A stretch of 63,535 nt of DNA, counting the filler, from Octopus bimaculoides (Eukaryota), in assembly GCF_001194135.2 (NCBI RefSeq). It is 5 parts of 5 records of this genome, joined end to end, with 100 filler letters (N's around TTAATTAATTAA, not from the genome) between each part and the next. Parts side by side here need not be neighbours in the genome. Positions count along the whole stretch, not along the records: positions 29,773 to 52,305 come from NC_068988.1; 4 more parts are not named here. One strand, written 5' to 3'. The notes beneath the pieces are model-generated. The model ran no database searches, had not been told where the DNA came from, and saw nothing but the letters and a program-made list of their open reading frames with translations. Positions 39,805-43,859 of this stretch are shown one piece after another; position 1 is the first letter of the stretch; every line of letters starts with the position of its first letter. The position numbers and the translations under genes are program-made.

Positions 39805-39846
39805 TTATATATTATCTCGATCATCAAAACATATTGTATGGTAAAT
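39805..39846 (-). CDS. PCF11-like: PCF11-like terminal coding exon 8 (IYHTICFDDRDNI*)
   Basis: Acceptor TTTTGCAG; supplies the H and C ligands equivalent to PCF11 IYHPSC; AATAAA at 39784-39789 on the minus strand just after the stop. Confidence 0.88.
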   Translation of the reverse strand: MYHTICFDDRDNI

Positions 39847-40026
39847 CTGCAAAATATAAATGAATACCTGAGATATAATCATTGTATTTCACACACACAC
39901 ACATGTATGTATATATCTGCATGTATATATGTGTATATTTATGTANNNNNNNNNNNNNNNNNNNNNNNNNNNNNNNNNNNNNNNNNNNNNNNNNNNNNNN
40001 NNNNNNNNNNNNNNNNNNNNNNNNNN

Positions 40027-40057
<31 letters not shown>

Positions 40058-43000
40058 CATAAATCTTTAGTTAAATATATTCAACGAGAATATCATATAC
40101 TGAATTTATATTGAGTGCTCTATTGTATCAAAGTATGAATACTATTAAAGTATTTATGTATTTAATACGAGCGATTATATATATTTTTTATATAATATGC
40201 TATTATTAATATCAGGAAATCAATATTAGAAATTTCATCAGAAAGATATATACATATGTAAAATAATTGTTGTATTAAATATATAGATATACTTACCAAA
40301 ATCAAAAACAGTAATTTTTAATCTTTAATTTATATTTCAAACAAACACCGCTTTATCATATTACATCATATTTTTAAAAAACTACCATTGAATAAATTAT
40401 ACAAAATTCAAAGTTTATATCTCTGAAGAGCAGAAGAGTTGTCTATAAATGCTTATCAATATAGGATTCCATTATTAGGACAGCACTTCTGCGAAACGAA
40501 CGTAAGATGCTTTAATACTTAATTCAAAACTTTTAAACTGTCATATTTGTTATTATTATATATTTATACTTATACATATTTACATATATTTATATTTCTA
40601 ATACAACAATTATTTTACATACGTATATATCTTTCTGATGAATTTTCTAATATTGATTTCCTGATATTAATAATAATATATTATAAATTATATATATATA
40701 CATACACATATGAGTGTGTGTGCACACACACACACATATATAGTATCATCATTTAGTTTTCCATACAAGGTGCATTTCAGTTTCGATTCAGACATTTTAA
40801 ATTAGGTATTTGTAATTGTAGTTTATTGTAATTTTAGTCTATCGTTAAATCTAATAAGCTGACCTGCCGACTTTGTAGTCCACATTGAAGGAGACGGATG
40901 TAACAACACTTTGAACACAACCTACTGACCATGGCTTATCACAGGTGACTAGTTTTCAGAATCCAGTTGTGGCCTGAAGACTATTTGGAAGCCCTGTTTG
41001 CAGTAAAGTTTTGTGTTAAACTGGGAAAAAGTAACAGAAACTTATGAACTGCTCCAGACTGGTCGTGTCTGTTTTTCGCTGACACAAGAGGTTCAAGGAG
41101 ATAGAGACGAGGTGAGGGACAATGAGACGAGTACATTCTTCGGACAGTCCAAAAGTTCTATGGAGACTAACGATTCTACCAGCTCACCGTCTTATTGATG
41201 ATGATGATGATGATAATAATAATAATAATAATTTTGTTCGTTAGAGATCTTACCTTACCGTCCAATGTAACCGCGTCTTTCACTTGCCATTCACCATCGT
41301 CGTCATTAAAGAAGTAGCAGAATTTCTCTTTACATACTGAACACGCCTGGCATTAGAGATTCAATTATTGAAATAAGAGACACGATTCAGACAAATGTAT
41401 TTGAGAAATGATAACATAATGGCATGCAAACATGTTTATACACAGCAAAATAGCATTTAGTAATACATATCTCATCACACACAAAATAATAATCATAAAA
41501 ATCAGTAAAACCCGGATAAGTGAGAGACAAATACGATTTAATTCCATATGCTTACAGTCGTTCACAGTCCACTTTCGGTGACTGCAATTCGTTGGTATAC
41601 CCACGAATATGCGTGAAGTTTGTAAATGTAAAACTTTCATGAGTTGTTAATCACAGCACATATCAATAATTAGCAATGCAATAGCATTAGTTGATAATAC
41701 ACTTACATTGTTTTCTGAAGAATATTTCGGACCATTTGACGGTTCGGTCTTTATATTTTGGTGCTTTTCCAGAAGAGATTGGAAAGGGTTATCTCCTAAT
41801 AACGACAAAATGTACGTAAATAAAGCATCGTAGCGTAAAACAAGTGAAAATATGATATTTCAATTTGCTATAAGAGATAAATCAATTTCCATATACCTAC
41901 CGTCACCATAATCTTCTTGAATGTACCACTGTCTGCATTTGGGATACTTTCTGTGTTTAGTGAAAGAGTTTTCTCGGAAATGTCCGTCCATGTGATCGTT
42001 CGTATTGTTAAATCGTCTCTCTCCACAAATAAAACATTGTTTTCCAAAGTAAAGGTTTTCAATAACAGGTCTTCGAAAACTGAAGAATAAAATAAGTAGG
42101 TTAGATTATCTTGAGTTTTTATATATAAAATGCAATATTACTCAACGTATCTATAAAGAAAAATTATAACTAAAGAAAGCTTCAAATAGCTTACGTTGTT
42201 AGATATTTTCTATTAAAATTTGGTAAAATCCTGCTCATCTTCTTATAAGAGTTTGAAGTATTCATTTCTGTAAGGTTTGGTTTTATTTTCAGCTCATTAC
42301 CGTGTTCAAGTTTATACAGCTTCCATTTGGTTTCATTCTGAAATATATAATGAACTAAATGACTAGTTAAAAATATCGCCTGACCGCTTCGTACTTAATA
42401 GGAAGATGTACACACACACGTGCGCATATTTTTTTCAATTTTTAGAGAGAGTGAGAGAGAAATGATGAGACAGACAGAGATCGGGAAGGAAAGAGAGCAG
42501 TCGTAAAAACAAATTGCATAACATAGGTTAAGTACGAAAAAACTAAAAAAGAAAATGCGGAAAACTGGTGTTTTCCGAAATTATAGTCAACTTCTAGAGT
42601 TTTGATATAAGTTGCCATAAGAAGAGGTAAAGAACCTCTCTTGTCACATTATGTGGACTTATCCAGACTTTCAAATTTCATTATTTGTCATTCATATTTA
42701 TAAACTTAAAATTACTATATTTACTTACATGGGTGTATTCCAACTCACACGTCTCTTTTTCGTCATGGATATCTTTGAAATGAAGCTCTTCTAAATAGAC
42801 ATGTTTTAAATTACAAGTGTTGTCTTTAATGTTGTCTACAATGGATTTAAAACGAATTGTTGGTTTGATTTTCAACTCGTTGCCATATTTAACTTTATAA
42901 ATTTTCCACTTTACTTGATTACTCTCTGATTTCGGGTCACCTTCTCCGATTTTATACTTTGGATCGCCCTAAAAATTAAAAATTCATATATTAGGTAAAT

Positions 43001-43859
43001 GATGTAATTTTCGACATGTCAGATTTTATAAGAAAATACATTAGAATAAAATATGAGAACAAGAACAAATAAAATATAAAGATTGTTAAATTACGTGGAT
43101 CTCGTTTACATCAACTTTCTTTTCAATGTTACCGCTCTCATCCAATCGCCCATCACGTGTATTTAGTTTTGATAAACTATGTCCATCTTGTTCATGGTTG
43201 CTGCTAGTTTCACTAATATCTGAAATATACGCTGATATATTTATTAACATTTAAAAAAGAAATAACTTTAATTAATGATTGATTAATAATATTTGTTATG
43301 CATTAAAATAAAAAATCACCAAGTACATACCGCTTGTAGTCACTGTTGGATCCTGTAGTGTTTCATCTTGCTGATCAACTGAAATAAGTTTCTGATTGTT
43401 TCGGCTGATATTTCCTCCATTCTGATAACTAGCTATTCTGTGACCTGGCGTACCTTGTTCAGATGTGTCGACATGATTTACTGTGGCGTGAATCATTGAA
43501 TTTGAAGCTGTGGATGTTGGTTGTGAAAGCCACGGTTGCTTTATATTTCGTAAAAGATAACGATTTCTATAAGCCTGGAATTTATAATCTGAATTAACAA
43601 ACTGCGGATAATATGACAGATGCAAGTTGTTTTGTTGGTTGTATAACCTGTGGCTACTCTGTCCGTTGGCGTTTCGATTCCAGGATGTTGCACGATATTT
43701 CTGTAAATAATGCGGTTGCCGATTGCTATTTTGGGAATTATAGCGACTTGAATTTGCTGTGTTAATGTCGAAACCCATATTTGATACTTGATATTGGGGA
43801 TAAATTTCTTTACTATTTTGAAGCGAGCTGTAACTATATCTGGTGTTGTTTCTATCCAT
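39805..43859 (-). CDS. PCF11-like: PCF11-like zinc-finger protein gene, 8 coding exons (43859-43331, 43219-43095, 42968-42729, 42337-42195, 42079-41901, 41795-41707, 41346-41254, 39846-39805), 1440 nt, ~479 aa
   Basis: All introns are GT-AG and the phases (1,0,0,2,1,0,0) join into one open frame. The C-terminus reads ...VIENLYFGKQCFICGERRF..DHMDGHFRENS..RQWY...ACSVCKEKFCYFFNDDDGEWQVKDAVTLDGK|IYHTICFDD. This matches the PCF11 C2H2 plus C2HC zinc-finger region as I recall it (human LYTGIQCYSCGMRF..DHLDWHYRQN..RRWY..CEICQEQF..WDEEEEEWHLKNAIRVDGKIYHPSCYED). Confidence 0.88.
40201..40675. repeat. 77-bp inverted repeat pair (40201-40277 and 40599-40675) flanking the candidate exon
   Basis: Direct comparison: 75/77 complementary. 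Confidence 0.95.
40297..40488 (-). other. Candidate alternative (poison or alternative terminal) exon, 192 nt, in the last intron of the PCF11-like gene
   Basis: Acceptor TTCGTTTCGCAG, donor G|GTAAGT; in frame KCCPNNGILY* (TGA 40458-40456); two ATTAAA hexamers (40324-40329, 40317-40322) followed by a U/GU-rich stretch. Confidence 0.5.
40766..41190 (+). mobile_element. Mariner-like remnant (left end plus transposase HTH) inside the last intron of the PCF11-like gene
   Basis: TA|CAAGGTG start; KFCVKLGKS..ETYELLQT...VFR*HKRFKE-DRDEVRDNE resembles the mariner N-terminal HTH. Confidence 0.7.
41254..41346 (-). CDS. PCF11-like: PCF11-like coding exon 7 (second zinc finger, CxxC half)
   Basis: Acceptor ATGCCAG, donor AAG|GTAAGA; ACSVCKEKFCYFFNDDDGEWQVKDAVTLDGK. 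Confidence 0.9.
41707..41795 (-). CDS. PCF11-like: PCF11-like coding exon 6
   Basis: Acceptor TTATTAG, donor GTAAGT; GDNPFQSLLEKH...SSENN. Confidence 0.85.
41901..42079 (-). CDS. PCF11-like: PCF11-like coding exon 5 (first zinc finger CxxC...HxxxH and RxWY motif)
   Basis: Acceptor TTCTTCAG, donor GTAGGT; FRRPVIENLYFGKQCFICGERRFNNTNDHMDGHFRENSFTKHRKYPKCRQWYIQEDYGD. Confidence 0.9.
42195..42337 (-). CDS. PCF11-like: PCF11-like coding exon 4
   Basis: Acceptor TATTTCAG, donor GTAAGC; NETKWKLYK...RKYLT. Confidence 0.85.
42729..42968 (-). CDS. PCF11-like: PCF11-like coding exon 3 (240 nt, phase 0-0)
   Basis: Acceptor TTTTTAG, donor GTAAGT; GDPKYKIG...CELEYTH. Confidence 0.85.
43095..43219 (-). 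CDS. PCF11-like: PCF11-like coding exon 2
   Basis: Acceptor TATTTCAG, donor GTAATT; open in the required phase (DISETSS...VNEIH). Confidence 0.8.
43331..43859 (-). CDS. PCF11-like: PCF11-like coding exon 1: low-complexity N/S/Q/Y/R-rich N-terminus
   Basis: ORF 43296..43859; donor G|GTATGT at 43331/43330; in-frame TAG 15 codons upstream of the ATG; candidate UTR acceptor TTTTGTTTCAG near 44063. Confidence 0.75.

What the first reader, a model, noticed from the sequence alone, without database searches (positions are those of the whole stretch)
39805..43859. A compact PCF11 paralog that keeps both zinc fingers but appears to lack the Pol II CTD-interacting domain
Seen: a clean 8-exon, ~479-aa model whose last ~150 aa match the PCF11 C2H2/C2HC finger region. 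The N-terminal ~220 aa are low-complexity N/S/Q/Y-rich. An in-frame stop lies 15 codons upstream of the ATG, and I see no CID-like exon upstream. Known: canonical Pcf11 couples cleavage/polyadenylation and termination through an N-terminal CID plus a C-terminal Clp1-binding/zinc-finger module. Inference: this is a divergent lineage-specific paralog that could act as a CID-less modulator or competitor of 3'-end processing, possibly tissue-restricted.
Basis: partly seen in the sequence, partly recalled or inferred. Interest (0 to 1): 0.8.

Follow-up and report, generated by a model that had tools for sequence, protein, structure and literature searches.

The report
Octopus PCF11-like gene without CID
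This is an intact but apparently silent octopus gene, one of a tandem family that keeps only the two-zinc-finger tail of the mRNA 3'-end factor PCF11 and has lost the part that docks onto RNA polymerase II; it is an unusual variant of a known protein rather than a new kind of system.

Summary
On the minus strand, 43859 to 39805, there is an 8-exon, 479-aa reading frame. All seven introns are GT-AG, and an in-frame stop lies 15 codons upstream of the ATG. The assembly gap (39946-40026) sits inside intron 7, so the reading frame does not depend on it. Both sides are collinear with an ungapped Octopus vulgaris chromosome.

The last ~135 aa are homologous to the PCF11 finger1 / Clp1-site / finger2 module. 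All eight zinc ligands and the R-x-W Clp1 contact are kept. The third Clp1 contact (yeast W489) and about 18 linker residues are missing. No CID-like sequence lies within 8.4 kb upstream here, or 10 kb upstream in O. vulgaris.

The gene is one member of a family: O. vulgaris has eight consecutive such genes, none with a CID.

Evidence on function is mixed:
- The frame is preserved: no stops (P=0.0045) and one in-frame indel against 11.9 expected.
- Amino-acid change against the ortholog is nearly neutral.
- No public RNA run holds the gene.
- The protein is absent from protein collections.

The "modulator or competitor" role is untested. Whether a canonical octopus PCF11 exists could not be checked. 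CID-less Pcf11 paralogs are known in Arabidopsis. Verdict: a new variant of a known kind, of moderate interest.

The parts
43331..43859 (-). Exon 1 (529 nt): ATG at 43859-43857; aa 1-176 of the S/N/Q/Y-rich low-complexity region
   Evidence: 94% identical to O. vulgaris, with one in-frame 3-nt indel
43095..43219 (-). Exon 2 (125 nt): aa 177-218, end of the low-complexity region
42729..42968 (-). Exon 3 (240 nt): aa 219-298; holds repeat copy 1, KWKIYKVKYGNELKIKP (42911-42861)
42195..42337 (-). Exon 4 (143 nt): aa 299-346; holds repeat copy 2, KWKLYKLEHGNELKIKP (42328-42278), and the pre-finger segment ILPNFNRKYLTT that aligns with canonical PCF11
41901..42079 (-). Exon 5 (179 nt): zinc finger 1, C361/C364/H375/H379 (42036-41980), and the Clp1-contact remnant R395-Q-W397 (41934-41926)
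   Evidence: exon length identical in all three subfamilies
41707..41795 (-). Exon 6 (89 nt): shortened linker between the fingers, about 18 aa shorter than in canonical PCF11
41254..41346 (-). Exon 7 (93 nt): first half of zinc finger 2 (C437, C440, W455)
39847..41253 (-). Intron 7: contains the assembly gap 39946-40026, microsatellites and a MITE-like repeat at 40176-40700
39805..39846 (-). Exon 8 (42 nt): IYHTICFDDRDNI plus TAA; supplies H469 and C472 of finger 2
   Evidence: 95% identical to O. vulgaris, stop codon conserved
39784..39789 (-). AATAAA 16 nt after the stop codon; candidate poly(A) signal, conserved in O. vulgaris
   Evidence: read; function inferred
43860..44190 (-). Conserved 5' flank (94% identical to O. 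vulgaris) with CACGTG, an inverted CCAAT and a (TA)7 tract; candidate proximal promoter and 5'UTR
   Evidence: function inferred, no transcript data

Best explanation
This is a real, single-copy, intact protein-coding gene of an Octopus species. It belongs to an octopus-lineage tandem family derived from the 3' part of PCF11.

The protein has three parts:
1. A disordered S/N/Q/Y-rich N-terminus (aa 1-218).
2. A family-specific lysine-rich segment carrying a twice-repeated KWK-x-YK-x3-GNELK[IV]K motif (aa 219-345).
3. The PCF11 'zcz' module: C2H2 finger, R-x-W Clp1-contact remnant, shortened linker, C2HC finger (aa 346-479).

It has no CID, no Pcf11 helical domain and none of the regions that human PCF11 needs for cleavage. 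It therefore cannot dock on the Pol II CTD.

The most likely activity is inferred from the human zcz fragment: zinc-finger-mediated RNA binding, possibly with weakened CLP1 binding, uncoupled from transcription. It would then act as a binder or titrator rather than as a working cleavage factor. Expression must be very low or confined to a stage or cell type not sampled so far.

Shown: gene structure, homology, ligand conservation, absence of a CID, family organisation, preservation of the reading frame. Inferred: RNA and CLP1 binding. Speculative: a regulatory role.
For: Structure:
- 8 GT-AG exons and 479 aa.
- All exons, splice sites and the stop codon are conserved in O. vulgaris.

Homology:
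- Pcf11_C at 35.1 bits.
- PDB hits 2nax/5m9z by sequence and by fold (rmsd 1.9 A, prob 1.00). Finger 2 is modelled at pLDDT 81-94.
- An exhaustive profile search gave 621 hits; canonical PCF11 proteins match both fingers in one stretch.
- C361, C364, H375, H379, C437, C440, H469 and C472 are invariant in 9 family members. These eight ligands plus R395 and W397 are also invariant in the alignment with canonical sequences.

No CID.

Family:
- Eight consecutive O. vulgaris models, CAI9726967-974.
- The same 179/~89/93/42-nt exon set encodes the module in all three subfamilies.
- A paralog signal exists in the window's own genome.

Constraint:
- P(no stop)=0.0045 under neutral simulation.
- One in-frame indel against 11.9 expected from introns 1-6, P=9e-5.
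- In the P0002-type duplicates, 35 of 61 exon differences fall at codon position 3, p=4e-4.

Literature: the human zcz fragment alone binds hClp1 and RNA, but fragments lacking the FEGP repeats are inactive in cleavage (PMC6239180).
Against: - No transcription evidence. No indexed RNA run holds the gene, its 3' end or exon 4.
- Three RNA-seq runs of the same species gave zero reads on the exons, with about 6% of each run read.
- The exact protein is in no public collection, and no similar model is annotated outside O. vulgaris.
- Substitutions against the ortholog look almost neutral. Codon positions are 28/28/37, p=0.42. NG dN/dS is 0.46 against a neutral expectation of 0.71, which is only the 6th percentile. 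Exons are 93.7% identical against 93.6% for introns 1-6.
- The residue equivalent to yeast W489 is absent, the linker is shortened, and Pfam Clp1_ID is not detected. CLP1 binding is therefore doubtful.
- The closest precedent, Arabidopsis PCFS1/PCFS5, is judged to be probable pseudogenes (PMC10839035).
Confidence: 0.55

Rival explanations
1. It is a silent, decaying or never-functional duplicate: a young unprocessed pseudogene whose frame happens to be still open, like Arabidopsis PCFS1/PCFS5.
For: - No RNA evidence anywhere.
- Codon-position pattern is nearly uniform.
- Exons are no better conserved than the short introns.
- Not annotated in the window's species.
- Plant precedent (PMC10839035).
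Against: - The frame is intact in two species separated by 93 coding substitutions. About 5.4 stops are expected, P(no stop)=0.0045.
- Indels are strongly depleted, and the only one is in frame (P=9e-5).
- All 14 splice dinucleotides and the stop codon are conserved.
- All zinc ligands are invariant across paralogs of 23-53% identity.
- Sister paralogs show third-position excess.
Confidence: 0.25
2. The model is only the 3' part of a longer, canonical PCF11 gene whose CID exons lie further upstream, beyond the piece.
For: - An AG directly precedes the ATG, so an upstream exon could in principle splice in.
- No transcript data fix the 5' end.
- I could not locate a separate canonical octopus PCF11.
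Against: - No CID-like sequence in 8.4 kb upstream here or in 10 kb upstream of the O. vulgaris ortholog and paralogs, although CIDs are about 60% identical across phyla.
- An in-frame TAG lies 15 codons upstream in both species.
- The Met and the following residues are conserved between subfamilies.
- Eight tandem copies each start the same way, and none is annotated with a CID.
- A conserved promoter-like block abuts the ATG.
Confidence: 0.04
3. The last exon is mis-joined. The scaffold gap joins unrelated sequence, so the second finger is incomplete and the real protein ends earlier, for example by reading into intron 6 as in the O. vulgaris annotation.
For: - The N gap between exons 7 and 8 could not be bridged by contigs.
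- O. vulgaris model CAI9726974 ends in intron 6.
Against: - The ungapped O. vulgaris chromosome has the same exon 7 - intron - exon 8 order, with 95% identical exon 8 and flanks.
- Paralogs P0002 and P0004 are annotated with the same 93+42-nt terminal exons.
- Exon 8 supplies the H and C that complete the finger.
Confidence: 0.02

Closest known systems
Canonical PCF11 / yeast Pcf11 (CF IIm / CF IA subunit)
   Same: - C2H2 finger, R-x-W Clp1-contact residues and C-terminal C2HC finger in the same order.
- Pfam Pcf11_C is met.
- Finger 2 superposes on 5m9z/2nax.
- The short segment before finger 1 also aligns.
   Different: - No CID and no helical domain.
- No match outside this module to the canonical proteins recovered (profile matches confined to the module).
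- 479 aa instead of about 1500-2000.
- Finger 1 loop is 4 residues shorter, and the inter-finger linker about 18 residues shorter.
- The residue equivalent to yeast W489 is absent.
- New N-terminal low-complexity region and KWK repeat.
- Present as a tandem multigene family.
Arabidopsis PCFS1 / PCFS5 (CID-less Pcf11 paralogs)
   Same: Lineage-specific, truncated Pcf11 relatives that keep the zinc-finger part and lack the CID (PMC8116057, PMC10839035).
   Different: - The plant genes are intronless, carry frameshifts and nonsense variants in populations, and give mostly non-stop RNAs, so they are probable pseudogenes.
- The octopus gene has 8 exons, an intact frame in two species and invariant zinc ligands.
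- Origin is probably independent (inference).
Engineered human PCF11 'zcz' fragment (aa 1340-1505) and deletion mutants dN1123/dN1184
   Same: Nearly the same domain content as the C-terminal third of this protein. The fragment binds hClp1 stably and binds RNA with a preference for G-rich sequences, but does not support cleavage (PMC6239180).
   Different: It is a laboratory construct with the full Clp1-interaction region. The octopus protein has a degenerate, shortened one and extra N-terminal parts.
Short 'Pcf11-like' models in other animals (e.g. Aethina tumida XP_049824330.1, 251 aa)
   Same: CID-less, with both fingers present.
   Different: - Keeps the canonical HLDWHFRQNR finger and the full linker.
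- Single model of unknown validity.
- No KWK repeat and no low-complexity N-terminus.

Membership tests
PCF11 / Pcf11 (canonical orthologs) | N-terminal Pol II CTD-interaction domain (Pfam CID, PF04818) | tested here: not met
   No CID hit at E<=1 or in paralogs at E<=10. Canonical control P0010 hits CID at 39 bits. No CID-like exon in the piece, L001 or L002.
PCF11 / Pcf11 (canonical orthologs) | Pcf11 alpha-helical domain after the CID (PF20845) | tested here: not met
   Absent; the control hits it at 47 bits.
PCF11 / Pcf11 (canonical orthologs) | First zinc finger (C-x2-C ... H-x3-H) before the Clp1 site | tested here: met
   C361, C364, H375 and H379 are invariant with canonical sequences; the loop is 4 residues shorter.
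PCF11 / Pcf11 (canonical orthologs) | Clp1-interaction motif with three invariant contacts (yeast R480, W482, W489; PMC1761425) | tested here: inconclusive
   R395 and W397 are kept. Position +7 after the W is G404, with Y403 at +6. The linker is about 18 aa shorter. Pfam Clp1_ID is not detected, but it is also below cutoff in a canonical control.
PCF11 / Pcf11 (canonical orthologs) | C-terminal C2HC zinc finger (Pfam Pcf11_C, PF21936) | tested here: met
   35.1 bits against a cutoff of 26.7; 2nax/5m9z by sequence and by fold.
PCF11 / Pcf11 (canonical orthologs) | Physical binding to CLP1 and RNA; activity in pre-mRNA cleavage and termination | not testable with these tools
   Needs biochemistry. 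No complex prediction was available.
CID-less Pcf11 paralogs of the Arabidopsis PCFS1/PCFS5 type | Pcf11 zinc-finger region retained, CID absent, lineage-specific | tested here: met
   The definition comes from PMC8116057 and PMC10839035.
CID-less Pcf11 paralogs of the Arabidopsis PCFS1/PCFS5 type | Intronless gene with disabling variants and non-stop transcripts (probable pseudogene) | tested here: not met
   8 exons, intact frame in two species. Population variation and transcripts were not testable.
Pseudogene | Stop codons, frameshifts or lost splice sites | tested here: not met
   None found in the window or in the O. vulgaris ortholog.
Pseudogene | Neutral substitution pattern | tested here: inconclusive
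   Codon positions 28/28/37. The dN/dS value falls at the 6th percentile of the neutral simulation.
Pseudogene | No transcription | tested here: inconclusive
   No reads or contigs in any RNA run examined or indexed. The tissues are unknown, and only about 6% of each raw run was read.

The most novel reading that the evidence does not exclude
Octopuses have evolved a rapidly evolving tandem family (eight genes in O. vulgaris) of Pol II-uncoupled PCF11 tail modules, each fused to a prion-like N-terminus. These would be switched on only in a narrow window, such as a germline or early embryonic stage. There they would retune poly(A)-site choice or CLP1 activity by competing with canonical PCF11 for RNA and/or CLP1. 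That would make them a natural dominant-negative layer on the 3'-end machinery.
Probability: 0.12. Interest if true: 0.7.

Novelty: new variant of a known kind. Interest (0 to 1): 0.4.

Why it matters
PCF11 dosage sets poly(A)-site choice and termination in animals. In vitro, the human finger/Clp1-site/finger fragment binds CLP1 and RNA yet cannot support cleavage (PMC6239180). A natural, frame-preserved gene family made of just that module would be a ready-made test of whether cells use CID-less PCF11 fragments as competitors.

It would also add a case of lineage-specific expansion of RNA-processing factors in cephalopods.

If the genes prove never to be expressed, the locus is instead an example of long-lived open reading frames in duplicated gene fragments. 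It is also a caution for annotation: the gene is missing from the window species' protein set, and two of the O. vulgaris models examined (P0001 and P0003) are mis-terminated or read through an intron.

Tried and rejected
- **Canonical octopus PCF11.** Two of the three word-indexed protein searches returned only short fragments and no cephalopod entry: the finger-module profile and the nemertean CID. A literature search for PCF11 plus octopus found nothing. This check therefore failed. It did not come out negative.
- **Structure.** The full-length AF2 model had mean pLDDT 44, with only finger 2 reliable. The aa 219-479 model had pLDDT 30 and was useless. The fold of the KWK-repeat segment stays unknown. 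The only Pfam hint there, PKD_3 at 19 bits, is below cutoff and was rejected.
- **Bridging the gap with DNA contigs.** Two calls were blocked by the repeat filter. The third showed only short high-copy unitigs. Synteny was used instead.
- **Expression in O. vulgaris.** The '?' runs of related species that hold exon words turned out to be genomic DNA, with introns present and no joints.
- **Other features in the piece.** No Rfam family or tRNA, no second gene copy and no other credible ORF.
- **Simple dN/dS.** The value of 0.46 is not clear evidence of purifying selection. Neutral simulation with the local mutation spectrum gives a mean of 0.71 for the same estimator.
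Full report
**What is there**

The gene lies on the minus strand. Reading 43859 down to 39805 gives eight exons of 529, 125, 240, 143, 179, 89, 93 and 42 nt. Every intron starts GT and ends AG. The frame is continuous, at 1440 nt or 479 aa plus TAA. An in-frame TAG lies 15 codons upstream of the ATG.

The piece (29773-52305) is 34% G+C, full of microsatellites and interrupted by seven N runs. It holds no second copy of the gene, no other credible ORF, and no Rfam family or tRNA.

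**The gap**

The Ns at 39946-40026 fall inside intron 7 (41253-39847), 100 nt from the acceptor of exon 8, between (TA)n/(CA)n runs. Exon 7 ends and exon 8 begins in phase 0, so the reading frame does not depend on the gap's length. The real question is whether the two sides belong together.

They do, on the evidence of synteny. The closest named sequence is a 118.9-Mb Octopus vulgaris chromosome, OX597821.1, and the whole piece is collinear with it. Window 44193->40682 aligns to L001 9668-13211, and the alignment resumes exactly at the gap's edge, with window 39945->39414 aligning to L001 13587-14133. In O. vulgaris, exons 7 and 8 are 95% identical to the window's, flanks included, and lie 1035 nt apart with no gap.

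Short-read contigs cannot bridge the gap. The flank at 40045-40660 is a repeat present at 100-1000 times single-copy depth. It belongs to a MITE-like element at 40176-40700 with 116-nt inverted arms.

**What the protein is**

Pfam gives Pcf11_C at 35.1 bits against a cutoff of 26.7, covering aa 435-474, and nothing else above threshold. The same stretch matches the solved second zinc-binding domain of yeast Pcf11 in three ways:
- as a single sequence,
- as a profile,
- by fold, with 5m9z at rmsd 1.9 A over 41 columns and probability 1.00. This used the only well-predicted part of the AF2 model, aa 430-479 at pLDDT 81-94.

A profile of aa 219-479 and its two O. vulgaris relatives was scored against 1.84 billion representative proteins. 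It found 621 proteins at E<=0.001. Canonical PCF11 proteins of 1500-2000 aa from arthropods, a hemichordate and a nemertean match profile positions ~118-260 as one stretch, E about 1e-15. That stretch covers the segment before finger 1, finger 1, the linker and finger 2.

In the alignment with canonical sequences, ten residues are invariant: the eight zinc ligands (C361, C364, H375, H379; C437, C440, H469, C472) plus R395 and W397. R395 and W397 correspond to yeast R480 and W482, two of the three invariant Clp1 contacts (PMC1761425). The differences are:
- The third contact, yeast W489 (seven residues after the first Trp), has no equivalent. Position +7 is G404, with Y403 at +6.
- The inter-finger linker is about 18 residues shorter.
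- The finger 1 loop is 4 residues shorter.

No CID and no Pcf11 helical domain are detected. A canonical control scanned the same way hits both.

The first 218 aa are S/N/Q/Y-rich. Residues 219-345 are lysine-rich and carry a 17-aa motif twice, KWKIYKVKYGNELKIKP in exon 3 and KWKLYKLEHGNELKIKP in exon 4. This motif has no convincing relative outside the family.

**No CID upstream**

CID sequences from three phyla were searched with tblastn against three targets:
- the piece, which gives 8.4 kb upstream of the ATG,
- 10 kb upstream of the O. vulgaris ortholog,
- the paralog locus.

The best hit had E=0.36. A real CID would have been found, since CIDs are about 60% identical between a nemertean, an ant and a limpet.

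Other evidence supports the ATG as the true start:
- The start Met and the following residues (M-D/N-RNN-T/S-RY) are shared by subfamilies that are only 46% identical overall.
- The upstream stop is conserved.
- The 330 nt before the ATG are 94% identical between species, with conserved CACGTG, an inverted CCAAT and a TA tract.

**It is a family**

O. vulgaris carries eight consecutive gene models, CAI9726967 to CAI9726974, within about 115 kb:
- one divergent 488-aa member (P0004),
- five copies of a 437-448-aa type that are at least 90% identical to each other (the P0002 type),
- one 202-aa partial model (P0003),
- the ortholog of the window's gene (P0001).

None has a CID. The module is encoded by the same four exons of 179, 86-92, 93 and 42 nt in all three subfamilies. 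This points to tandem DNA duplication rather than retrocopying.

The window's own genome also holds paralogs. The 42-nt unitig coding KWKLYKLEHGNELK stands at 2-3 times single-copy depth in three DNA runs, while the rest of the gene is at single-copy depth. Related Octopus species hold the locus too, as genomic contigs.

UniProt labels the O. vulgaris paralogs (though not the truncated ortholog model) 'Pcf11 C-terminal domain-containing protein'. I found no paper on them.

**Is it functional?**

For function:
- The O. vulgaris ortholog keeps all eight exons, all splice dinucleotides and the stop codon. It is 478 aa and 87% identical.
- With 93 coding differences, a neutral simulation using the local noncoding mutation spectrum expects 5.4 stop codons. 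It leaves the frame open in only 0.45% of trials.
- Introns 1-6 carry 10 indel events in 1208 nt. The exons carry one, of 3 nt, against 11.9 expected (P=9e-5).
- Among the recent P0002-type duplicates, 35 of 61 exon differences fall on third codon positions and there are no exon indels.

Against function:
- For this gene, the differences from its ortholog are spread 28/28/37 over the three codon positions (p=0.42).
- The Nei-Gojobori dN/dS of 0.46 sits only at the 6th percentile of the neutral simulation, whose mean is 0.71.
- Exons are no more similar than the short introns, 93.7% against 93.6%.
- There is no transcription evidence. No indexed RNA run holds the gene, its 3' end or exon 4.
- Three RNA-seq runs of the same species gave zero exon reads in the ~6% of each that was read.
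- The exact protein is in no public collection, and the only similar proteins found are those of O. vulgaris.

My reading is that the frame is kept open by selection, the sequence evolves fast, and expression is very restricted or very low. The pseudogene alternative keeps a substantial share of the probability.

**How it probably works**

This section is inference. In human PCF11, the fragment made of the two fingers and the intervening Clp1 site is enough for stable hClp1 binding. It also provides most of the RNA-binding energy, with a preference for G-rich RNA. Fragments lacking the FEGP repeats do not support cleavage, and the CID is dispensable in vitro (PMC6239180).

A natural protein reduced to this module should therefore bind RNA and perhaps CLP1 without being able to act in cleavage or to ride on Pol II. 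It would be a binder or competitor. The degenerate Clp1 site makes the CLP1 part uncertain. The S/N/Q/Y-rich N-terminus and the KWK repeat have no assignable role, and both structure predictions were uninformative there.

**Comparison with what is known**

It works most like the C-terminal module of PCF11 but fails the membership test for a PCF11 ortholog: CID and helical domain are absent, and the Clp1 site is incomplete. CID-less Pcf11 paralogs are already known in Arabidopsis as PCFS1 and PCFS5 (PMC8116057). Those are intronless, variant-ridden and judged probable pseudogenes (PMC10839035). The octopus family differs in being multi-exon, tandemly expanded, frame-preserved and fused to new N-terminal sequence. 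Short 'Pcf11-like' models also exist in insects.

**Limits**

- I could not show that the octopus has a separate full-length PCF11, because the protein search tool returned only short fragments. I assume it does, because PCF11 is a universal, essential factor (established knowledge, not tested here).
- The species of the window is coded. It is an Octopus other than O. vulgaris, about 92-94% identical in this locus.

**Verdict**

It is a new variant of a known kind, of moderate interest. The decisive tests are transcript evidence and multi-species codon analysis.

Noticed in passing
window 40176-40700 (intron 7): MITE-like element with 116-nt inverted arms (91% complementary) and 293 nt between them. 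Its words stand at 100-1000 times single-copy depth in four DNA runs, so it is a very abundant repeat family and probably the cause of the adjacent assembly gap.
   Followed up: partly
L001 about 13214-13500 (O. vulgaris intron 7): At the place matching the window's gap, O. vulgaris has a different, nearly perfect palindromic insertion flanked by (TA)n. The same microsatellite spot has taken up different small elements in the two species.
   Followed up: no
window 42287-42328 (exon 4): A 42-nt unitig coding KWKLYKLEHGNELK stands at 2-3 times single-copy depth in three DNA runs of the window's species. At least one or two paralogs with an identical stretch therefore exist elsewhere in that genome.
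   Followed up: partly
L001 10001-13731; L002 6997-9011: Two public O. vulgaris models look wrong. CAI9726974 (the ortholog) ends by reading into intron 6, although exons 7 and 8 are intact downstream. CAI9726970 (202 aa) reads through an intron after finger 1.
   Followed up: partly
L002 and L003 (O. vulgaris OX597821.1, about 70.34-70.45 Mb): Eight consecutive Pcf11_C-only gene models in both orientations. Five are at least 90% identical, indicating recent duplications. Their exon differences are enriched at third codon positions.
   Followed up: partly
window 41196-41236 (intron 7, just after exon 7): An (ATT/ATC)n trinucleotide tract attracts thousands of unrelated RNA-seq and DNA reads, giving a false depth peak. 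It is not evidence of expression.
   Followed up: yes
window 42441-42481 (intron 3): A GA-rich simple repeat with very high depth in all DNA runs. It splits the contigs of every run there.
   Followed up: no
window 43860-44190: The 330 nt upstream of the ATG are 94% identical to O. vulgaris and end at a (TA)n/(CA)n microsatellite. CACGTG, an inverted CCAAT and a (TA)7 tract are all conserved, which suggests a compact promoter.
   Followed up: no
window 41647-41808 (exon 6 into intron 6): Reading through the exon 6 donor gives ...ENN-VSVLSTNAIALLIIDMCCD-stop, the same tail as the annotated O. vulgaris protein. It could be an intron-retention isoform lacking finger 2, or simply an annotation artefact. 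No RNA data exist to decide.
   Followed up: no
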